Positions 21,182-55,213 of a stretch of DNA of 64,000 nt are shown piece after piece; the first letter of the stretch is position 1, and every line of letters starts with the position of its first letter. Under the pieces are notes generated by a model. That model saw only the letters and a list, made by a program, of their open reading frames with translations, ran no database searches and had not been told where the DNA came from. The position numbers and the translations under genes are program-made. The stretch lies in sequence record ON529853.1; one strand, 5' to 3'.

Positions 21182-22381
21182 GTGAGCACCTTTGCTGTTC
21201 CGATCCTCGCGATCGACGACGTCTACGATCACCCCAACGCTGATCGCCTCTCCATCATCCGTATTCGCGGCTACGAAGCCGTCGCCGGCAAGGCCGAGGA
21301 CGGCTCGCACCGCTTCGCCAAGGGCGAGCGCATCATCTACGTGCCCGAGGGCGCGGTGGTGCCGGACCAGCACCTGAAAGAGCGCGGATACTGGAACGAG
21401 GCCAAGGGCGTCGGTCTGCTGGCGGGCACAAAAGGCAACCGCGTCAAGGCCATCACCCTGCGCGGGGTGCTGAGCCAAGGCCTGGTGTGGAAATCCTACC
21501 GGCTTCCGGGTGAATCGCTGTTCAGCGATCGCGTGCACGCTTCCTACTCGGCGGGTGAGGGTCGCGTGGCCCTGCACACCTACGGCGTCGGCGACGACGT
21601 CGCCGACTTCTTCGGCATCACCAAGTACGACCCGCCGATCCCGCCGGGCCTGGACGGCGACGTCGTCGGCATCTTCGAATCGATGTTCAACTACGACATC
21701 GAGAACGCCAAGGCCTTCCCGAACCTGTTCACCGAGGACGACATCGTCACGGTGACGGAGAAGCTGCACGGCACCTTCTGCCGCATGACCTACATGCCCG
21801 GCATCGAGCCGCGCGAGGACCTGTTCGGCGACGGCCGCGTGGCGATCACCTCCAAGGGTCTGGGCGCCGACGGCCTGGTGTTCAAGAACACCGCCTTCAA
21901 TCGCCAGAAGAACGTCTACGTGCGCAACATGCTGCCCCTGGTGGACCACTTCGTCTCGGCCTGCAACCAGGACGCCAAGGGCCTGACGGTTCACCTGATG
22001 GGCGAGGTCTACGGAGCCGGCGTGCAGGACCTGAAGTACGGTCGCACCGAGGACCAGGGCTTCGCCGCCTTCGACGTCTGGATCGAGAAGTCGGGATTCC
22101 TGGCCGAGGTCGAGAAGGACTACGCCTGCATCGCCTTCGGGGTGGAGCGAGTGCCGGTCCTGTTCGAGGGCTTCTACGACAAGGCGCTGATCGAAGACTT
22201 CGCCAAGGGCGACACCACGATCGACGGCGCCGAGAACATCCGCGAAGGCGTCGTCGTGACCCTGACCGGCGAGCAGGACAAACGCCCCGACGGCAACGGC
22301 CTGGGCGGCACCCTGCGCCCGATCTGCAAGGTCGTGTCGGAAGCCTACCTGACCCGCAAGGGCGGGACCGAACTGCAATAG
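21182..22381 (+). CDS. RNA ligase, Rnl2/DRB0094-like family
   Basis: N-terminal HPNADRL OB-like domain, TEKLHGT (motif I), GEVYG, FDV and REGVV. Confidence 0.85.
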   Translation: MSTFAVPILAIDDVYDHPNADRLSIIRIRGYEAVAGKAEDGSHRFAKGERIIYVPEGAVVPDQHLKERGYWNEAKGVGLLAGTKGNRVKAITLRGVLSQGLVWKSYRLPGESLFSDRVHASYSAGEGRVALHTYGVGDDVADFFGITKYDPPIPPGLDGDVVGIFESMFNYDIENAKAFPNLFTEDDIVTVTEKLHGTFCRMTYMPGIEPREDLFGDGRVAITSKGLGADGLVFKNTAFNRQKNVYVRNMLPLVDHFVSACNQDAKGLTVHLMGEVYGAGVQDLKYGRTEDQGFAAFDVWIEKSGFLAEVEKDYACIAFGVERVPVLFEGFYDKALIEDFAKGDTTIDGAENIREGVVVTLTGEQDKRPDGNGLGGTLRPICKVVSEAYLTRKGGTELQ

Positions 22382-25556: not shown

Positions 25557-25643
25557 TGGAGGTGCGACCTGGACTCGAACCAGGATGAGGGTTTCCCCTA
25601 CGGCTTATGAGGCCGCTGCCTATTCCAGCCGCGCCACCGCACC
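25557..25643 (-). tRNA. tRNA with CAT anticodon and long variable arm (Met or Ile2 unresolved)
   Basis: Acceptor GGTGCGG/TCGCACC + TCCA; anticodon arm GCGGC-CTCATAA-GCCGT; variable arm AGGG-GAAA-CCCT; T arm CCTGG-TTCGAGT-CCAGG. The D stem is weak. Confidence 0.7.
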
Positions 25644-26339: not shown

Positions 26340-26685
26340 GTAAAGTGGGGAACTTTCTGTTCCAAGGCCCGGCAAGCCGGGGTTCCCCATACCCGTGGTC
26401 GCCCTTAGGCGGCCAGGAGGACTCGTTCGCCAGCGGCGAAGTTGTCGTTGTGTGCTTCGACAGTTGTCAAAGTTGGATCGTGAGCAGCCCGAAGACCACC
26501 ATGCAGACCCTAGCACTCGCCATTCAATCCCGTCACCAACGTCAATCGATACTGTTCGGCCCCTCAAACCGCGCCCGTCTCCCATTATAGGAGGGGGATT
26601 GGTGGAGCCGACGGGATTCGCACCCGTGTCTTGTCCGTCTGTTTCGTTCTCTCTGCTTCGGTCCGAAGACCTCCGCGCGACGAAA
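26340..26685 (-). ncRNA. ssrA: Two-piece (circularly permuted) tmRNA
   Basis: The acceptor piece ends ...CCCGTCGGCTCCACCA at 26600. After an intervening segment the coding piece starts GGGGCCGA at 26563, giving G3:U70. Tag frame 26455-26405 reads AHNDNFAAGERVLLAA*. Outer boundaries are approximate. Confidence 0.9.
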
Positions 26686-26738: not shown

Positions 26739-26825
26739 TGGAGGGACGGGTGAGAATCGAACTCACGCCAGGCTTTCGCCAGGAGGATTTGCAGTCCCCC
26801 GCCTTACCACTCAGTCCACCGTCCC
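26739..26825 (-). tRNA. tRNA-Cys(GCA) with long variable arm
   Basis: GGGACGG/CCGTCCC + TCCA (U73); GGGGA-CTGCAAA-TCCTC; GGC-GAAA-GCC variable arm; GTGAG-TTCGATT-CTCAC. Confidence 0.85.
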
Positions 26826-27948: not shown

Positions 27949-27983
27949 AGAGCCCCGACCGATGTCTCGGCCGGGGCTTTTTC
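27949..27983. terminator. Bidirectional terminator
   Basis: AAGAGCCCCGACCGA...TCGGCCGGGGCTTTTT. Confidence 0.75.
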
Positions 27984-28247
27984 TCGCCGTCGTCTGTGTC
28001 TCGGCCGGCGCAGCGTCAGGAGGGTGTGTCGCGAGACCTCCGTCACGGCTCCAGGGCGCTGGGTCCCCTGAAGCAATCCTCACCTGAACCGGGCTTTCCT
28101 CCCCAAGGGGCTGAAGGTGGCGGCGTCCTGGCGACCCTGCGGGGCTCACACGGCAAGGTCGCTTCTCAATGCCAGGCATAGAAGTCGACAGGAGAAAGGG
28201 TTTTCCTATTCTCCGTCATTGGCGTGGTCCGATGTCGATGTAGCACA

Positions 28248-28798
28248 GCCTCTGGCTGCCGTCACGCCTGGTTCCCATTTCTAGGACGGCGTTCTCCTCA
28301 GAAGACGGGTCCGGGTAGACCTCGTGTGGCTCTTCAGCGCCTGACGGAACTCGACGACGTGGTTGCCGGCCGTCTGAACTGGCGTCCCCAAGCGCTCCCA
28401 GGGGCATGCCGTAGGAGTGTGGCAGGGTCCGCCCCACGCTGTGTCAGGATATACGACAATGAAGAGGGGGAAGTCAATACCGCCTCTGGCGGCCGTCACG
28501 CCTGGTCGTTCGTCTCGGGCGGCGTTCCCGTCAGGCCTGATTGTCCCCGGCCGAGGTTTGTTCGGGGGAGCGGTGCGGTCAATCACCCCGACTCACGTTC
28601 TCTCGTAACCCGGCAGTACGGGCTTAAGCGCGCACGAGCGCTGCAAGGCAGTCACGCGGTGGTCCGCCTGTGGTGGGGCTTCAAATCCAGACGCGCAATC
28701 CCCGCCTGTATGTCAGGATTGTCGTCAACGGTCAAGGTGAAAGGGCGCTCTCTCCCGGTCACGCCTTGTCCTGATGTCTCAGCCGGCGTTCGCTTCAG
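28248..28798. repeat. Three dispersed copies of GTCACGCC-N19/20-GGCGTTC-N3-TCAG
   Basis: Copies at 28261, 28495 and 28758. The first two also share 24 of 25 nt over 28248-28272 and 28482-28506. Confidence 0.7.
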
Positions 28799-28973
28799 AC
28801 AGTACGGCATTCTCGGGGCCGTCCCACTCACCCGCTGTCGTCGGGCCTGTTCCCAGAGGAAGGTCTACCCCAGGACAGATTGCTCCAGAGGCCAGGTCAG
28901 GGCGAACCCTGTGTGCTGCGCCATAAGGACCTTCAGCAAGCGGTTAGCCTATCAGGATCGGGGCCAGAGGGCA

Positions 28974-29008
28974 AAGAAAAACGGCCCTGATCCGAAGATC
29001 AGGGCCGC
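28974..29008 (-). terminator. Terminator after the Ro60/TROVE gene
   Basis: Minus strand GCGGCCCTGATC-TTCG-GATCAGGGCCGT-TTTTCTTT. Confidence 0.85.
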
Positions 29009-29064: not shown

Positions 29065-30450
29065 TCAGCCGACGACGTTTCCGTCCGAGAAATCCATCGC
29101 TTCGACTTCCCGGATATAGCGCAGGACGCTCTCCGAGAAGCCGTCGATGTGGACCCACCCGTTGCCGTACCCGACACCATTCTGGTGGCTGGCGACGTTG
29201 ATCATATAGGCCTTGCCGGCCTTAGGCGCCGGCAGTCGTCCTCCGCCCATGGTGCTGCTCAGGGCGCCGTTCGCCTGTTCGTCAGTGATGACGATCAGGC
29301 GGTCGCAGGCGAACTGGCGGTTCACCACGTCCACGGCCTGGGCCAGGGCGGTGCCGTTGTGCGGCTGCGAACGGATCACCGCATCGACCCCCGCCATGCC
29401 CTTGCGGGCCGGCACTTCCACGAGGCCGTTGGAGAAGGTCACGACGCGCACGTCGCCCGGCAGGATCGACGCCAGCGTCGCCGCCGCGTCCATCCGGGTC
29501 AGGTCCGACTTTCCGGACAGCTTGTTCCGCATGGAATAGGAGACGTCGACCATGACCACGGTCGATCCCGTGAAGGGTTCGGCCTGGTTGATCGAGGCCA
29601 CCAGGGCGTCGTCCAGCGCCCGCTCGAACGAGGGCGCATAGCGCGCCGCCGCCGTGAAGCGGAAGGGCAGGACGCGATCCGCGCCCTTGCGCGCCCGGAT
29701 CGCGGCGTTGACCAGATCGCGATCGACGCCGGCCTGCTCCATGTTGCGCAGGTTGCGCAGCAGGGCGAGGTAGCCCAGCTTGCCGTCGGTCAGCAGACGC
29801 GTGAACGTCGCCTTCTTGTCCGCGCCGCCCGACAGGGCGACTTCCCAGGTGTCGGGCGCCGCCAGTTCGTTGTCGACCAGCTTCTTGTAGAGGGTCTCGC
29901 GGTCATCGTTCGCCGGCTTGGCGTGCGCCAGGAACAGGACGTCGCGCAGACGCACCGACTTGGCCCGATCGTATTTGGCGATCTGGTAGGCGTCGAAGTT
30001 GCCGAAGGCCATCGACAGGCCCTTCTTCACCTGGGCCGACAACGGCGCCTTCTTGCCGTTCGAGCGCAGCGGGTTCAGCGCCCAGTAGAGGGCCAGGAAC
30101 TCGCTCAGTTCGTCAGCGCGCTGAATGACGCGCGCGATGGTGAGCGACACCAGGGCCGAACCTGAGCCGCGCTGGGCCAGCACGACGAGCAGCAGAAGGG
30201 GAACGTGACGCAGCTTGGCGTCCTCGCGGGCCTCGACGGCGATCTGGGCGAGGGTCTCGACCGGAACCTCCTTGGCGAGGCTCTGGATACGGTCGGCGAT
30301 CGACACGCCGCTCTCGTAGAAATTGTCTTCCCAGAGCAGGCAGGACATGACCGACCGGCGCAGGGCCTGCGTCTTGGTCATCCGATCGGCCGGCGCGCCT
30401 TCATGAGTTCGCGCGGTGGTCGCTTTGGGCTTTGCGTTGATCGACGCCAT
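29065..30450 (-). CDS. rsr: Ro60/Rsr TROVE-domain RNA-binding protein with C-terminal vWA domain
   Basis: THEGAPA, LRRSVMSCLLWEDNFYESG, KY, TWEVALS, LGYLALLRNLRNM, VLPFRF and MIDAS-like VDVSYSM...ITDEQ. SD AGGAGG upstream. Confidence 0.9.
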   Translation of the reverse strand: MASINAKPKATTARTHEGAPADRMTKTQALRRSVMSCLLWEDNFYESGVSIADRIQSLAKEVPVETLAQIAVEAREDAKLRHVPLLLLVVLAQRGSGSALVSLTIARVIQRADELSEFLALYWALNPLRSNGKKAPLSAQVKKGLSMAFGNFDAYQIAKYDRAKSVRLRDVLFLAHAKPANDDRETLYKKLVDNELAAPDTWEVALSGGADKKATFTRLLTDGKLGYLALLRNLRNMEQAGVDRDLVNAAIRARKGADRVLPFRFTAAARYAPSFERALDDALVASINQAEPFTGSTVVMVDVSYSMRNKLSGKSDLTRMDAAATLASILPGDVRVVTFSNGLVEVPARKGMAGVDAVIRSQPHNGTALAQAVDVVNRQFACDRLIVITDEQANGALSSTMGGGRLPAPKAGKAYMINVASHQNGVGYGNGWVHIDGFSESVLRYIREVEAMDFSDGNVVG

Positions 30451-30483
30451 GATGGGTCCCCTCCTAAGTGTCTGTCGGCAGGA

Positions 30484-30656
30484 TGACCTTGAGGTTGGGG
30501 AGGAAAAGTCGAAAACCCTTTCATACCGGTGCGTCTACCGTTTCCGCCACCCGCGCATTGTGGCGCGCGAGCCAGGACTTGAACCTGGAAGCCCTTGACG
30601 GGCGCCGGTTCCAGACGAAGTATGGGCTCTCTGCGCCATCCCCGACCTCGCGGTCA
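30484..30656 (-). ncRNA. Y-RNA-like element with permuted class II (Leu-like) tRNA domain
   Basis: Terminal stem GAGGTCGGGGA/TCCCCAACCTC; variable arm GCCC-GTCAA-GGGC; T arm CCAGG-TTCAAGT-CCTGG; CTCGCGC-GCCA-caat-GCGCGGG; D region GGTGGCGGAAACGGTAGACGC. Confidence 0.75.
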
Positions 30657-30661
30657 GTGAA

Positions 30662-30812
30662 CTCTCCGGCGCTCTGGTAGGAAGGCGGGGGAACATACGC
30701 AGCCGGATAGCGGGATCGAACCGCGAGACCGGGGGTTTGAATCCCGGCTTATCAACCAGCGATGTAACCGACCGCTTTCACCACCCGCCCACCAACCAGG
30801 GCGCCGGAAAAG
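30662..30812 (-). ncRNA. Y-RNA-like element with T-loop
   Basis: Roughly 25-bp imperfect terminal stem, GTGGTGAAAG motif, T arm GCGG-TTCGATC-CCGC. Confidence 0.65.
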
Positions 30813-30817
30813 CAGAA

Positions 30818-30970
30818 ACATGAAGGCGGTGGGGGAATAAGCGACCCCACTCTTTTTTAGGCGTGCTACCGTTACACCAAACGCCGCTAGGCGACGTTGC
30901 GGAATCGAACCGCTCATCCCGCTCCACATGCGATGAAAGTGACGTCTGTCGCCACCCACCGCCTTCATGC
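30818..30970 (-). ncRNA. YrlA-like Y RNA (permuted tRNA domain)
   Basis: 16-bp terminal stem GCATGAAGGCGGTGGG/CCCACCGCCTTCATGT; GTGGCGACAG motif; T arm; loop-closed acceptor stem AACGTCGC-CTA-GCGGCGTT; D arm GTGT-AACGGTA-GCAC. Confidence 0.75.
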
Positions 30971-30979
30971 TGTTGGTCC

Positions 30980-31155
30980 AGAAGCGTATGGTGGATCGAC
31001 AGGGGAACCGGCGGAAAGGCGCCGTTTGGACTATCGTTCTAACCAACTGAACTACCGCCGCGCCCGAGGGTGCGCCGGGTGGGACTCGAACCCACGACCT
31101 ACAGTGTGCGAAGAATGCCTCTCCTTCACCACCTGTCGACCCGCCATACGCTTCT
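30980..31155 (-). ncRNA. YrlA-like Y RNA (permuted tRNA domain)
   Basis: 24-bp terminal stem; GTGGTGAAGG motif; T arm GTGGG-TTCGAGT-CCCAC; loop-closed acceptor stem; D arm GTTC-AGTTGGTTA-GAAC. Confidence 0.8.
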
Positions 31156-31161
31156 CGACCC

Positions 31162-31307
31162 TGTCCGCGACAGTCCCGAGGACTGACCCCGCAGAGAACC
31201 GGAGTTCTCTTGCGGGGTCAAGTCGTCCGGGAATAGGCGGAACCGAGAGCGGGGCCAAGGCCCCAACGTACCAAAAACGAAGAACTCGGTCCCTGTCGCC
31301 ACGGACA
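31162..31307 (-). ncRNA. Y-RNA-like element without tRNA domain
   Basis: TGTCCG-tgg-CGACAG pairs with CTGTCG-CGGACA. It carries the GTGGCGACAG motif and three internal hairpins, just behind a TTGACA promoter. Confidence 0.55.
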
Positions 31308-31372
31308 ATGACTGTGTGCCCGATCCCGTTCATTGTGTCAACAACGACGACAGAAAAAGTTGGGATTTGCGG

Positions 31373-31407
31373 CAAAAAGAAACCCCCGGATCGCTCCGGG
31401 GGTTTCC
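31373..31407 (-). terminator. Terminator after the repressor-like gene
   Basis: Minus strand GGAAACCCCCGGAG-CGA-TCCGGGGGTTTCTTTTT. Confidence 0.8.
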
Positions 31408-53296: not shown

Positions 53297-54023
53297 AATA
53301 CATCTCCGCCTTGGCGTGCGGGGCGGTCAGGGCCTTGCGCCAGTCCCAGACGTACCAGGCGTAGGAGAAGCGCGGGCTCTTGGAGTCCTCGCCCGCCTTC
53401 TTCTCGATCCAGACCGGACGGAAGCGCAGGGTGATCTTGGCGATGAAGGCGGGGTGGTCGATCAGGTGGGCGCGACCCTTGGCCGTGTCCCACTCATGGC
53501 GCATCAGCATGGCGACGTAGCCCTGCTCGGCCTCCATCAACTCCAGCGCCTTCTCAACCGCCAGCACGGCTTCCTTGCCGTAGGGCGGGTTGGTGATGAT
53601 GCAGTCCGGGCGGAAGCCCAGGGCCGCCTCGACCTCGGACATGGAGATCGGACGGGCGGGCGCTTCGTTTTTCGTGACTCCGCCGTCCAGCGTCGCCTTG
53701 TCGATCGTGCGCTCCCAGGCCGCCACGGCGATTTCGTGGGCGTCGCCGTCGGCGTAGATGTTGAAGAAGTCCAGCATCGCCGTGGGGTCGAGGCCCTCGT
53801 AGCGGTGAATGTCGCTGGTGGCTTCCAGCCGGCACAGCGGGCCGACCAGTCGGGAAATGGCGCCGTTGCCGGCAAAGGGCTCCCAGAAGGCCATCTGCTC
53901 CAGGTCGTCCTCGACCACAGAGATGAAGGCCTCGGTCGCGCGGGCCGGGGTCGGGTAGAAGTCCAGGGCGTTCCGGGGGTAGTTCGTACCCCCCAGCATG
54001 GAGGGGTCTTGACGCGTGGTCAT
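53286..54023 (-). CDS. Amino (N6A/N4C) methyltransferase-like protein
   Basis: DFYPTP, WEPFAGNG and ITNPPY. Confidence 0.75.
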   Translation of the reverse strand: MTTRQDPSMLGGTNYPRNALDFYPTPARATEAFISVVEDDLEQMAFWEPFAGNGAISRLVGPLCRLEATSDIHRYEGLDPTAMLDFFNIYADGDAHEIAVAAWERTIDKATLDGGVTKNEAPARPISMSEVEAALGFRPDCIITNPPYGKEAVLAVEKALELMEAEQGYVAMLMRHEWDTAKGRAHLIDHPAFIAKITLRFRPVWIEKKAGEDSKSPRFSYAWYVWDWRKALTAPHAKAEMYFAG

Positions 54024-54576
54024 TCAGCAGGCCGTTTTGATGAAGGGGATGCGCGGTCGGAGCGCTTGCGGCCTTCTTGGTCTCACGATTAACCACGAAC
54101 GTCAAGATTTACGTCAATGGGAGTCAGTTACACTGGCACACTTGCGCCGGGGCCGCCCTTGGTCTATTCGGTGGGCTTCGAGAAGACGACGAGGATCGTC
54201 GAGCGTCTCCTGGCCGCGCATGGGTCAGGATCAACGCCGTCGTCTCAGGGAGACGCGGACCTAAGGCGATAGGGCTCCGCGTCAATGGGTGAAGTGAGGA
54301 ACGGACGGCGCATCCGTGTTGGAGCCATAGTCCAGGTGGGCGATTCACTGCCTTACCCGGTCCGAGTCGCGGTGATCGAATACCGCCGCGTGACGTGACG
54401 CCGACCGACAGTAGAGGATGGCGTGACCTAAGGGGAGAGGCCCATGCAGGGCGGACCGCGTCGGACGCGGCCGCCGACTAGCCGGAGGGGCTGCACACCC
54501 GATGGACAGGATCGCCCCGCCCGCGAAGAAGCGAATGGGGGATGACGCCGGCGCGGCCGACACAGACGACGCGCAC

Positions 54577-54610
54577 GAAAAAGGCCCCGATCTTGCGATC
54601 GGGGCCTTTT
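54577..54610. terminator. Bidirectional terminator
   Basis: AAAAAGGCCCCGATC-TTGC-GATCGGGGCCTTTT. Confidence 0.85.
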
Positions 54611-55160
54611 GAGTCGTGGCGGGGTCCTCGGTTTTCATCGTCGCGGCCGGCGTGCCTTTCGCTAAACGATCCCGCATCTCTTCGCGCCGGGCGGACCCGG
54701 ACTACTTTACCGCCGGCCCCCATACGGTGAACCTAGAAGGCAGGGCCTCAAGCGCATCCTAGCAGCGCCATAGCGGTGTGTGAGGAAGGGCTTCTCACCT
54801 CACGACCTTGGAAGTGGACGACCGGGGAAGCGTCCCGCCGGCCTGGTCGTCCGGGCATTGCGCCCTTGAAAGCGAAACGGCAGGTGGGGACGGACCCGAC
54901 CTGCCGCTCTGTGACCAGGGGAGTGGCGTACCTGTCCCGTTGGTCGGTGCGGCGGCGCATGGTCCGAAGACCAGAGGAGCCTGTGATCAGGGGTAACTCG
55001 AAAGTCCCGCGCGCTCACCCGCTGCTGTTTATTCTGATGCCCCGTCGTTCCAGCCGGGGACTGCGTGTGGCCGTCGCCAATACCGCCTTGGTCCGTTCCA
55101 GGAGCCACCCTGCCTGAGCAGTCGCCAGCGAAGCCGTACTATAAGCGCCTCGCCGAGAAG
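54611..55160 (-). ncRNA. Candidate large structured RNA of about 550 nt
   Basis: Bounded by a consensus promoter and a terminator. No credible ORF. Many hairpins and long-range complements. Confidence 0.5.
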
Positions 55161-55167
55161 AGGCCGG

Positions 55168-55207
55168 ACTATAATCGTAGTTTTCTGTTATGTCAAGATC
55201 GACGGCA
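55168..55207 (-). promoter_or_regulatory. Sigma70-like promoter
   Basis: TTGACA-17 nt-TATAGT. Confidence 0.8.
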
Positions 55208-55213
55208 GAAAAA

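What the first reader, a model, noticed from the sequence alone, without database searches (positions are those of the whole stretch)
29065..31330. Phage Ro60/Rsr gene preceded by an array of five structurally diverse Y-RNA-like elements
Seen: five back-to-back elements of about 145-176 nt (31162-31307, 30980-31155, 30818-30970, 30662-30812, 30484-30656), each closed by a 12-25 bp terminal helix. Each carries a related motif on its 5' side: GTGGCGACAG, GTGGTGAAGG, GTGGCGACAG, GTGGTGAAAG, ATGGCGCAG. They lie between a TTGACA promoter (about 31340) and the rsr SD, with a terminator after rsr. Three contain a tRNA domain in permuted order (T arm, loop-closed acceptor stem, D arm); one has only a T arm and one has none. 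Established: bacterial Rsr binds Y RNAs, and YrlA-class Y RNAs have this permuted tRNA-mimic domain. Inference: one phage operon encodes Ro60 plus an interchangeable set of tethers, possibly recruiting different host RNases or acting as tRNA decoys against anticodon-nuclease defences. Five different Y RNAs in one array is well beyond the one or two I know of per bacterial locus.
Basis: partly seen in the sequence, partly recalled or inferred. Interest (0 to 1): 0.92.

Follow-up and report, generated by a model that had tools for sequence, protein, structure and literature searches.

The report
Phage Ro60 gene with Y-RNA array
A giant phage of the water bacterium Brevundimonas carries a gene for the ring-shaped RNA-binding protein Ro60. 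Just upstream lie five different small structured RNAs of the kind that partner with Ro60, four of them built from rearranged or mimicked tRNA. This is an unusually large version of a known protein–RNA partnership.

Summary
The finding is real. The window is Brevundimonas jumbo phage vB_BpoS-Bambus. ORF 29065-30450(-) is a Ro60/Rsr protein by domain content and by predicted fold.

The 988-nt spacer upstream holds exactly five co-oriented RNA modules, and they share one scaffold:
- a terminal helix
- an invariant bulged U
- a GG:CC pair
- a 4-5 x 7 nt internal loop (5' YGNA / 3' GNNNNUU)
- a 7-9 bp second helix
- a (U)UACUUC-type box

This scaffold covaries strongly, both across 23 modules of four phage lineages and across 108 further modules from 49 other rsr loci. 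A model trained only on those 108 finds the same five modules and nothing else in the 64 kb.

- Element 1 is an 86-90 nt module (31221-31310) followed by a separate hairpin.
- Element 4 is a cloverleaf-like domain in the normal arm order.
- Element 3 carries all four tRNA arms, including an anticodon-like loop.

Close relatives carry 5, 6 or 8 modules in conserved order. Other rsr loci mostly carry 1-3.

Phage Ro60 with Y-like RNAs is already published, including for CcrColossus. What is new is the array size, the mixture of tRNA topologies and the scaffold signature. Function remains inferred.

The parts
31374..31407 (-). Intrinsic terminator of the upstream HTH gene: an 11-bp GC-rich stem, a 6-nt loop and UUUUU. 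It isolates the array from upstream transcription.
   Evidence: Read directly from the sequence. Matches the terminator portions of several Rfam leader models. Conserved in position in all 9 phages.
31336..31341 (-). Conserved TTGACA (-35-like hexamer), about 30 nt upstream of module 1. This is the putative array/rsr promoter.
   Evidence: Identical in all 9 related phages at a near-constant distance from module 1. No E. coli-type -10 was found, so the promoter is inferred.
31221..31310 (-). Module E1: a minimal Y-like RNA. It has P1 (7 bp), a bulged U at 31301, GG:CC, an internal loop CGACA/GCCUAUU, a 9-bp P2, the box UUCUUCG and a small GC hairpin. It has no tRNA arms.
   Evidence: R1 51.6 bits, R2 40.4 bits with E=1.6e-8. 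The scaffold is in the MFE. The local closing helix is conserved in 9 phages.
31184..31220 (-). Stand-alone 16-bp hairpin between E1 and E2. It occupies the slot where the Gurke and Colossus lineages carry an extra module ('1b').
   Evidence: Fold of -39.1 kcal/mol, z=-5.2. Alignment and module lists.
30980..31155 (-). Module E2: a YrlA-like Y RNA. A ~23-bp terminal helix encloses the scaffold (GG at 31130-31129). It contains a class-I tRNA domain permuted at the anticodon loop: T arm, loop-closed acceptor, D arm.
   Evidence: Best Rfam YrlA hit, 32.6 bits, E=1.4e-4. R1 104 bits, R2 88.1 bits. ARAGORN calls it a 76-nt tRNA only after re-permutation. P2 covaries between lineages.
30817..30971 (-). 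Module E3: a 19-bp terminal helix plus scaffold (GG at 30953-30952). All four tRNA arms are present, permuted at the D-arm/anticodon-arm junction. The native 7-nt anticodon-like loop is AUGUGGA.
   Evidence: R1 102.8 bits, R2 74.8 bits. The scaffold is in the MFE. Re-permutation with no added bases is called a tRNA by ARAGORN.
30663..30810 (-). Module E4: a long interrupted terminal helix plus scaffold (GG at 30782-30781). It holds a tRNA-like cloverleaf in normal order, where P2 serves as an 8-bp acceptor-like stem. This is followed by a D-like hairpin, an anticodon-like arm with a 9-nt loop, and a T arm.
   Evidence: Fold. R1 63.5 bits, R2 52.5 bits. Weak tRNA-Sec match, 21.9 bits. The stems covary among the Bambus, Gurke and Colossus copies. 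ARAGORN does not call it.
30484..30656 (-). Module E5: scaffold (GG at 30637-30636) plus a class-II (long variable arm, Leu-type D arm) tRNA domain permuted at the anticodon loop. It is the orthologue of CcrColossus module 7.
   Evidence: R1 97 bits, R2 63.7 bits. ARAGORN calls it an 88-nt class-II tRNA after re-permutation. P2 shows compensatory changes between Bambus and Domovoi.
30460..30465 (-). Shine-Dalgarno AGGAGG, 9 nt before the rsr ATG.
   Evidence: Read directly from the sequence. Conserved in the relatives.
29065..30450 (-). rsr: a Ro60-type protein of 461 aa with a HEAT-repeat TROVE ring and a vWA domain. The MIDAS motif DxSxS (DVSYS) is intact.
   Evidence: Pfam TROVE 2.6e-12 and VWA_2 2.4e-6. 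PHROG 850, 2.7e-63. phmmer against phage phiLo Ro60 gives 1.7e-19. The AF2 model has pLDDT 88, and the top 13 Foldseek hits are all Ro60.
28973..29005 (-). Intrinsic terminator after rsr: a 10-bp stem, a UUCG loop and a U-run.
   Evidence: Read directly from the sequence.

Best explanation
The region is a single transcription unit of a jumbo phage. It encodes a Ro60/Rsr ring protein preceded by five non-identical Y-RNA-like modules.

Each module folds on its own into a common docking scaffold:
- a terminal helix
- a bulged U
- a GG:CC pair
- an asymmetric internal loop
- a second helix
- a (U)UACUUC-type box

By position and by its GGYGNA(N)G motif, this scaffold corresponds to the Ro60-binding stem of known Y RNAs.

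The apical part differs in each module:
- E1: none
- E2: a class-I tRNA permuted at the anticodon loop
- E3: a four-arm tRNA permuted at the D/anticodon junction
- E4: an unpermuted cloverleaf-like domain
- E5: a class-II tRNA permuted at the anticodon loop

Inferred mechanism. The transcript is cut into separate 90-175 nt RNAs. The long terminal duplexes and tRNA-like ends are plausible substrates for RNase III, RNase P or RNase E. Each RNA binds the outer face of the phage Ro60 ring through the scaffold. Its tRNA-like head then docks the RNP onto a host tRNA- or RNA-handling protein. Polynucleotide phosphorylase is the precedent, from D. radiodurans, Salmonella and phage phiLo. In this way the phage would make several differently addressed Ro60 RNPs that redirect or restrain host RNA decay and quality control during infection.

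Shown here: protein identity, RNA architecture, covariation, conserved order and linkage to rsr. Inferred: transcription, processing, Ro60 binding and partner recruitment.
For: Protein:
- TROVE and VWA_2 domains.
- The predicted fold matches Ro60 structures, with TM 0.74 to phiLo Ro60, 0.63 to D. radiodurans Rsr and 0.59-0.66 to Xenopus and human Ro60.

RNA scaffold:
- All 31 modules in five phages share it, with very different helix sequences.
- On alignment A1, 91.2% of cells are paired against 64.8% when shuffled and 46-53% when slid. 24 of 28 pairs show changes on both sides, and 0 of 500 shuffles reach the observed score.
- On 108 modules from loci not used for training, 91.5% are paired against 61.2%. 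There are 854 double-change cells against 272, again 0 of 500.
- Near-invariant positions include the bulged U (99/108), the G in GGYG (108/108), and U35, C37 and U39 of the box (108/108 each).

Specificity:
- R1 and R2 each give exactly 5 hits in 64 kb, all in the array.

Linkage:
- 49 of 51 non-redundant rsr loci have at least one module directly upstream on the same strand.
- No protein-coding neighbour of rsr is conserved.

Conservation:
- Modules 1-4 occur in the same order in 9 phages whose Rsr is only about 70% identical. The tail of the array varies.

tRNA mimicry:
- Sub-threshold YrlA hits.
- ARAGORN re-permutation tests.

Precedents:
- Y RNA tethers Rsr to PNPase, and YrlA mimics tRNA (PMC4201824).
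- phiLo Ro60 binds two upstream Y-like RNAs and host PNPase (PMC12135203).
- Highly transcribed regions lie upstream of an Rsr-like gene in Listeria phage CKA15 (PMC12282133).
Against: - There are no expression, processing or binding data for this phage.
- No element reaches the Rfam YrlA gathering score (32.6 against 69 bits).
- The E. coli-consensus scans found no -10 element and no terminator.
- E1 alone folds only marginally better than shuffles (z=-1.95).
- For E2, the scaffold fold is 2.2 kcal/mol above the MFE.
- Alignment A2 was fitted to model R1, so its pair counts lean towards the structure. R2 is only semi-independent because R1 collected its training set.
- The nine isolate phages represent only four lineages.
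- PNPase as the partner rests purely on analogy.
Confidence: 0.72

Rival explanations
1. The modules act mainly as a panel of tRNA decoys. Their elbows, acceptor-like stems and (in some) anticodon-like loops would soak up or report host tRNA-targeting enzymes such as anticodon nucleases, other tRNases or modification enzymes. Ro60 would serve only as a stabiliser or as a sensor of damaged decoys. The nearby nick-sealing RNA ligase could provide repair.
For: - E3 has a native 7-nt anticodon-like loop, and E4 has an anticodon-like arm.
- Of 108 independent modules, 62 begin a hairpin at the box. 34 of those have 7-nt loops with pyrimidine-32 (29/34), U33 (27/34) and purine-37 (26/34), yet carry 24 different central triplets.
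- The E3 loop differs among orthologues: AUGUGGA, UAUGGGA, AUCUGGA and AUUAGGA.
- A DraRnl-type RNA ligase lies at 21182-22381.
- In some genomes rsr and its array sit inside tRNA gene arrays.
Against: - E2 and E5 have no anticodon loop, and E1 has no tRNA part at all.
- The E4 loop is 9 nt and is not conserved.
- The hairpin scan was heuristic and favoured 7-nt loops.
- Variable triplets may simply be unconstrained.
- The strict linkage to rsr and the invariant Ro-type scaffold show that Ro60 binding is central, not accessory.
Confidence: 0.15
2. The array is chiefly a cis-acting structured leader of the rsr mRNA. Ro60 would bind its own leader to autoregulate translation or mRNA stability, and no stable free small RNAs would accumulate.
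For: - There is no terminator between the array and rsr, and the last module ends 19 nt before the Shine-Dalgarno.
- Modules always lie upstream on the same strand.
Against: - Five to eight different, individually conserved modules, with complete tRNA-like domains and conserved order, are far more than an autoregulatory site needs.
- In Salmonella, Y RNAs are co-transcribed with rsr yet accumulate as separate RNAs (established knowledge; PMC4201824).
- phiLo Y-like RNAs bind Ro60 in trans in vitro (PMC12135203).
Confidence: 0.08
3. The spacer is a decayed phage tRNA gene cluster (pseudo-tRNAs) that happens to lie next to rsr.
For: - GenBank annotators called a 'tRNA-Ser' (Gurke, Kikimora) and a 'tRNA-Gln' (CcrColossus) inside the homologous arrays.
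- Real tRNA genes and a tmRNA lie 2.2-4.9 kb downstream of rsr on the same strand.
Against: - ARAGORN and Rfam tRNA find nothing in the window's array.
- The arm order is permuted.
- Every module, including those without tRNA arms, carries the same non-tRNA scaffold, with covariation in more than 130 copies.
- Linkage to rsr holds in 49 of 51 loci from unrelated contexts.
Confidence: 0.02

Closest known systems
YrlA / YrlB of Salmonella Typhimurium and the Rfam family YrlA (RF02553)
   Same: - Encoded beside rsr.
- The 5' and 3' ends form a stem with a GNCGAA-type motif, followed by an internal loop and a second helix.
- The head is a tRNA mimic with a T arm, a loop-closed acceptor and a D arm (E2, E5).
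- A shorter companion RNA exists.
   Different: - The best score is 32.6 bits against a cut-off of 69.
- The motif differs by one base in every copy.
- This clade has an invariant bulged U, a fixed 7-nt 3' loop strand and a UUACUUC-type box that the Rfam consensus lacks.
- There are five modules rather than two, and they lie upstream of rsr rather than downstream.
- No rtcBA genes are attached.
Deinococcus radiodurans Yrn1/Yrn2 and the Rsr-Y RNA-PNPase (RYPER) machine
   Same: - Y RNAs lie upstream of rsr.
- More than one RNA is present: four small RNAs were originally seen upstream of rsr, with at least two regarded as Y RNAs.
- The tRNA-like arms are in a different order from YrlA, as in E4 here (PMC4201824).
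- It supplies the mechanistic model of a Y RNA acting as a tether.
   Different: - The elements here are phage-borne.
- PNPase binding is untested.
- This Rsr is closer to phage phiLo Ro60 than to D. radiodurans Rsr (TM 0.74 against 0.63).
Thermus phage phiLo Ro60 with Yrl1 and Yrl2 (PMC12135203)
   Same: - A phage Ro60 gene with Y-like RNAs directly upstream.
- It is the closest solved structure.
- Experiments show RNA binding and complexes with host PNPase.
   Different: - phiLo has two RNAs, here there are five.
- The phiLo RNAs were defined by a CGAA motif, and the passages I read do not mention permuted tRNA domains.
- Protein identity is only 24%.
Caulobacter phage CcrColossus TROVE gene and its Y-like RNA (listed by Chen et al. 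2014, as cited in PMC12135203)
   Same: A true homologue: syntenic HTH - array - rsr, with modules 1-4 orthologous to those in the window.
   Different: - CcrColossus has eight modules.
- I could not read the 2014 supplementary table, so I do not know how many were reported.
- GenBank annotates one module as tRNA-Gln.
Listeria phage CKA15 (PMC12282133)
   Same: Three very highly transcribed non-coding regions lie within 2 kb upstream of an Rsr-like gene on the same strand. The authors suggest they are Y RNAs.
   Different: - The host and phage are unrelated.
- No structural analysis was done, and I did not test these regions against the models built here.

Membership tests
Ro60 / Rsr (TROVE) proteins | TROVE domain followed by a von Willebrand A domain with a MIDAS motif | tested here: met
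   Pfam TROVE 47.1 bits (cut-off 23) and VWA_2 28.6 bits (cut-off 27). DVSYS, GT and TDEQ align with phiLo Ro60. D302, S304 and S306 are invariant in 40 homologues.
Ro60 / Rsr (TROVE) proteins | HEAT-repeat ring closed by the vWA domain (the Ro60 fold) | tested here: met
   AF2 model with pLDDT 88 and pTM 0.84. The top 13 Foldseek PDB hits are all Ro60, with E 6.6e-21 to 1.1e-10 and TM 0.56-0.74.
Ro60 / Rsr (TROVE) proteins | Binds Y RNA on the outer surface and misfolded RNA in the central cavity | not testable with these tools
   Needs EMSA, co-IP or a solved structure.
Bacterial Y RNAs (general) | Encoded next to rsr | tested here: met
   The array ends 33 nt before the rsr start codon. The same arrangement holds in 49 of 51 loci.
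Bacterial Y RNAs (general) | The 5' and 3' ends pair into a long stem, followed by a large internal loop | tested here: met
   Covariation.
Bacterial Y RNAs (general) | GNCGAAN0-1G motif on the 5' strand of the Ro-binding stem (PMC4201824) | tested here: inconclusive
   The motifs are GGCGACAG, GGUGAAGG, GGCGACAG, GGUGAAAG and GGCGCAG. Each differs from the published pattern at one position, and the clade consensus is GGYGWAG.
Bacterial Y RNAs (general) | Co-purifies with or binds Rsr | not testable with these tools
   No experimental data are available.
YrlA (Rfam RF02553) | Score at or above the gathering threshold (69 bits) | tested here: not met
   32.6 bits for E2 and no YrlA match for the other four. 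27.1-42.3 bits in the relatives. No hit at threshold in 20 genome loci.
YrlA (Rfam RF02553) | tRNA-like domain in the order T arm, loop-closed acceptor stem, D arm | tested here: met
   Met for E2, E3 and E5: ARAGORN recognises a tRNA only after circular re-permutation. Not met for E1 (no arms) or E4 (normal order).
YrlA (Rfam RF02553) | Carries tRNA modifications and is a substrate of tRNA enzymes | not testable with these tools
   T-loop UUCRANY and D-loop GG are present, but whether they are modified is unknown.
Genuine tRNA genes | Detected by ARAGORN or by Rfam tRNA at threshold in native order | tested here: not met
   None found in 30484-31310.

The most novel reading that the evidence does not exclude
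Ro60-linked Y-RNA arrays may be evolvable panels of tRNA surrogates. The same docking scaffold is fused to tRNAs cut open at different places. Many copies display an anticodon-type loop that keeps U33 and purine-37 but whose triplet changes freely between related phages. The phage would present these on Ro60 to trap, titrate or detect host enzymes that attack or modify particular tRNAs. A nick-sealing RNA ligase, a tmRNA and unusual class-II-shaped tRNAs in the same neighbourhood would complete an RNA-defence countermeasure module.
Probability: 0.13. Interest if true: 0.85.

Novelty: new variant of a known kind. Interest (0 to 1): 0.6.

Why it matters
Ro60 and Y RNAs are conserved from bacteria to humans, yet it is still unclear what the variable part of a Y RNA is for.

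This phage clade offers a natural experiment. One Ro60 protein is paired with five to eight Y RNAs. They keep an almost invariant docking scaffold but carry different tRNA-derived heads: permuted at two different sites, unpermuted, or absent. The order of these modules is conserved across phages whose Rsr is only about 70% identical, which argues that each has its own role.

The scaffold signature and the two covariance models also detect 108 modules beside rsr in 49 of 51 other viral and bacterial loci. Rfam's YrlA model reached threshold in none of the 20 genome loci scanned with it, and genome annotators sometimes label these modules as tRNAs.

If the RNAs are expressed and bind Ro60, two questions become directly testable:
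- what the heads recruit
- why phages invest in Ro60

Tried and rejected
- **Rfam at gathering thresholds.** It finds nothing in the array. Only relaxed E-value scans show YrlA-like signal.
- **E. coli-consensus promoter/terminator scan.** It found nothing, even though two clear hairpin plus U-run terminators are visible by eye. The promoter is therefore only inferred, from the conserved TTGACA.
- **Simple regex/helix scans for the motif.** They were far too permissive in this GC-rich DNA: 211 hits per strand, then 32 against 13 expected. I replaced them with covariance models.
Rejected, because it is not conserved and its 3' strand forms its own hairpin.
- **My first idea that GUAG pairs with the CUAC of the box.** Rejected, because the relevant columns do not covary.
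- **An anticodon-loop-opened model for E3.** ARAGORN did not recognise it. The D/anticodon-junction model was recognised.
- **Protein-coding reading of the spacer.** ORFs of 107-130 aa exist. It was rejected because close relatives differ by 1-nt indels and by compensatory stem changes.
- **Search for conserved protein neighbours of rsr.** None found.
- **Supplementary tables of Chen et al. 2014 and the 2020 Annual Review.** Neither was available.
Full report
**Identity of the window.** The region is 100% identical to Brevundimonas phage vB_BpoS-Bambus (ON529853.1). This is a 348-kb jumbo phage of the Dolichocephalovirinae, and window position = record position - 186000. In the GenBank record the ORF 29065-30450(-) is called 'RNA-binding protein'. 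The 988 nt between it and the upstream HTH gene carry no annotation.

**The protein.**
- The 461-aa product has a TROVE domain and a vWA domain and belongs to PHROG 850.
- Its closest solved relative by sequence is the Ro60 of Thermus phage phiLo (E=1.7e-19 over residues 11-451). The MIDAS residues align.
- An AlphaFold2 model built on 40 homologues has pLDDT 88 and pTM 0.84.
- Its 13 best Foldseek matches in the PDB are all Ro60 structures: phiLo TM 0.74, D. radiodurans Rsr 0.63, Xenopus and human Ro60 0.56-0.66.
- It is therefore a Ro60/Rsr by domain content and fold. RNA binding itself is not testable here.

- All five stretches fold with long closing helices and lower free energies than shuffled controls, with z from -3.7 to -6.4.
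- The quoted 5' motifs are present.
- Rfam finds nothing at curated thresholds. At relaxed thresholds only element 2 matches YrlA, at 32.6 bits against a threshold of 69 and E=1.4e-4.

**Relatives.** Eight further isolate phages share the synteny HTH gene - spacer - rsr: Marchewka, Domovoi, Papperlapapp, Kabachok, Gurke, Kikimora, CcrColossus and CcrPW. Together with Bambus they form four lineages. Aligning the nine spacers shows three things:
- a conserved TTGACA at a fixed distance from the first element
- a conserved terminator upstream of it
- a series of modules whose stems differ but whose junctions are conserved

**A common scaffold.** Anchoring on the motif shows that every module in every phage (31 copies) has the same layout:
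- helix P1
- an invariant bulged U
- G-G paired to C-C
- an internal loop with 4-5 nt (YGNA or YGNAN) on the 5' side and, in nearly every copy, 7 nt (G-N-N-N-N-U/A-U) on the 3' side
- helix P2 of 7-9 bp, usually starting G:C
- a box resembling UUACUUCG

The P1 and P2 sequences differ greatly between paralogues yet remain complementary. In the six P1 layers next to the motif, 23-24 of 24 copies are paired, using two to six pair types per layer. 5' strands matched with 3' strands of other module types pair at only 4.4 of 8 positions, against 7.7 for their own partners.

On MAFFT alignment A1 (23 modules) with a hand-drawn structure of 28 pairs:
- 91.2% of cells form pairs, against 64.8% when partners are shuffled and 46-53% when partners are slid.
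- 24 of 28 pairs have changes on both sides.
- 0 of 500 shuffles reach the observed score.

The scaffold is part of the unconstrained minimum-energy fold of E1, E3, E4 and E5. For E2 it lies 2.2 kcal/mol above the minimum.

**Specificity and generality.**
- Covariance model R1, built from A1, finds exactly five matches in the 64-kb window. All lie in the array on the rsr strand: 31221-31310, 30995-31140, 30825-30963, 30681-30792 and 30493-30647.
- In 39 IMG/VR contigs and 26 GTDB genome contigs encoding a relative of this Rsr (25-62% identity), R1 finds one to seven matches directly upstream of rsr on the same strand in nearly all.
- 108 such matches at E<=1e-5, none from the training phages, again show 91.5% pairing against 61.2% shuffled. 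They have 854 double-change cells against 272. This alignment was fitted to the model, which favours the structure.
- Column counts give the clade signature: bulged U 99/108; GGYG with the last G 108/108; A21 98/108; box U35 108, A36 98, C37 108, U38 99, U39 108 and C40 102; and a 3' loop strand running G (94/108), then variable positions, then U (105/108), U (99/108), CC.
- Model R2, trained only on those 108, recovers the same five elements in the window (E=1.6e-8 to 2.4e-21) and nothing else. It finds six in Gurke and eight in CcrColossus.
- Among 59 loci, the RNA array is the only thing conserved next to rsr. No protein-coding neighbour recurs.
- Rfam's YrlA model reaches threshold in none of the 20 genome loci tested.

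**Corrections to the observation.**
- *Element 1.* It is closed by a local helix (GUCCG-U-GG with CC-CGGAC) that is conserved in all nine phages, which makes it 31221-31310. In Gurke/Kikimora and CcrColossus/CcrPW an additional module ('1b') occupies that space. In Bambus a separate 16-bp hairpin remains at 31184-31220.
- *Elements 2 and 5.* These are tRNAs opened at the anticodon loop and closed at the acceptor end. If the closing loop is cut and an artificial anticodon loop is added, ARAGORN recognises a 76-nt class-I tRNA and an 88-nt class-II tRNA. It finds nothing in the native order. The amino-acid names it prints come from the loops I inserted and mean nothing.
- *Element 3.* It is opened elsewhere. 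Joining the end of its D arm to the box hairpin, with no added bases, yields an ARAGORN tRNA whose native anticodon-like loop is AUGUGGA. CcrColossus module 6 behaves the same way, with loop CUGUUAA.
- *Element 4.* It has the arms in normal order: an acceptor-like P2, a D-like hairpin, an anticodon-like arm with a 9-nt loop, and a T arm. The stems covary among lineages. It is not called a tRNA.
- The window therefore holds one minimal module and four tRNA-derived modules of three different topologies.

**Evolution of the array.** Modules 1, 2, 3 and 4 occur in that order in all nine phages. After module 4 the Bambus group keeps type 7, the Gurke group keeps type 6, and the Colossus group has 6, 7 and 8. 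Type 1b is present in the last two groups. At E<=1e-5, 33 non-redundant viral loci carry on average 2.3 modules, distributed as 1:6, 2:15, 3:10, 4:1 and 5:1. Eighteen genome loci carry 1.8 on average. Five is thus at the top of the range, and the eight in CcrColossus is the maximum at this threshold. The 'tRNA-Ser' of Gurke/Kikimora and the 'tRNA-Gln' of CcrColossus in GenBank lie inside modules and are mis-calls.

**Expression signals.** These are read from the sequence and are inferred. The HTH gene ends with a strong terminator (31374-31407). A TTGACA conserved in nine phages follows (31336-31341), but no E. coli-like -10 was found. No hairpin plus U-run separates the modules or the last module from the AGGAGG at 30460-30465. 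A canonical terminator follows rsr (28973-29005). This fits one transcript that is later processed. The 19-24-bp terminal duplexes and the tRNA-like ends are plausible RNase III, RNase P or RNase E substrates, but no processing data exist.

**Mechanism.** Published work gives the following:
- Y RNAs bind Ro60 through the stem formed by their ends and tether it to PNPase. YrlA-class RNAs mimic tRNA (PMC4201824).
- Phage phiLo Ro60 binds two upstream Y-like RNAs and forms complexes with host PNPase that damp its activity (PMC12135203).
- A Listeria phage shows very high transcription of non-coding regions upstream of an Rsr-like gene (PMC12282133).

By homology of architecture and strict genetic linkage, I conclude that the five modules are partner RNAs of the phage Ro60. 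The invariant scaffold is the likely docking site, and the variable tRNA-derived heads are the likely addressing part. Which host factors they engage is unknown.

The decoy idea gains some support. In 34 of 108 independent modules the box starts a hairpin with a 7-nt loop that keeps pyrimidine-32, U33 and purine-37 but carries 24 different triplets (a heuristic scan). The loop of element 3 differs among orthologues. However, two of the five window modules lack any anticodon loop and one lacks tRNA features entirely.

**Novelty.** Phage Ro60 genes with Y-like RNAs are published, and CcrColossus is named among them (PMC12135203, citing Chen et al. 2014). I could not see how many RNAs were listed there. 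I found no description of the following:
- arrays of five to eight modules
- the coexistence of differently permuted, unpermuted and minimal modules
- the scaffold signature with its invariant box

I rate this a new variant of a known kind.

Noticed in passing
window 26405-26662 (-): A two-piece (circularly permuted) tmRNA gene matches Rfam RF04321 at 57.9 bits (threshold 47). It is not annotated in the GenBank record. Gurke has one in the same place.
   Followed up: partly
window 26739-26825 (-) and 25557-25643 (-): The phage tRNA-Cys(GCA) and one tRNA-'Met'(CAU) are 87 nt long, with long class-II-type variable arms, U73 and an encoded CCA. That shape is normally restricted to Leu, Ser and Tyr tRNAs in bacteria. 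E5 is also class-II shaped.
   Followed up: partly
window 27950-28972: About 1 kb downstream of the rsr terminator has no annotated gene here or in the five close relatives. It contains two exact-core copies of CAGGCGTGACGGCNGCCAGAGGC on the - strand (28482-28504, 28248-28270). Their small hairpins differ by a compensatory change (CCGCC/GGCGG against CAGCC/GGCUG). A third, weaker copy is also present. No Rfam match.
   Followed up: partly
window 21182-22381 (+): The annotated 'RNA ligase' is an equivalog-level match to TIGR02306, the Deinococcus DRB0094-type RNA ligase (164 bits, cut-off 151). It also matches Pfam RNA_ligase (PF09414) and the PHA02142 OB-fold domain. It lies about 7 kb from rsr, with the tRNA and tmRNA genes in between.
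   Followed up: partly
L057, L058, L065, L067 (GTDB genome contigs): In these MAG contigs the rsr gene and its upstream Y-like modules sit inside co-oriented arrays of 14-21 tRNA genes per 7-kb locus. This suggests a mobile or prophage tRNA island.
   Followed up: no
L003 3959-4033, L009 3942-4016, L004 4609-4676: The GenBank features 'tRNA-Ser' (Gurke, Kikimora) and 'tRNA-Gln' (CcrColossus) fall inside Y-like modules (types 6 and 3). They are probably mis-annotations caused by the anticodon-like hairpin plus T arm.
   Followed up: yes
alignment A2 (108 modules from L012-L076): About 40 of the 108 modules are short (65-105 nt). They consist only of the scaffold plus a small hairpin starting at the box. 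Some loci (for example L025 2747-2965) carry three such minimal modules in tandem.
   Followed up: partly
window 54000-55213: A gap of about 1.2 kb with no annotated feature lies between a DNA methylase gene and the spanin/lysis cassette. I did not examine it.
   Followed up: no
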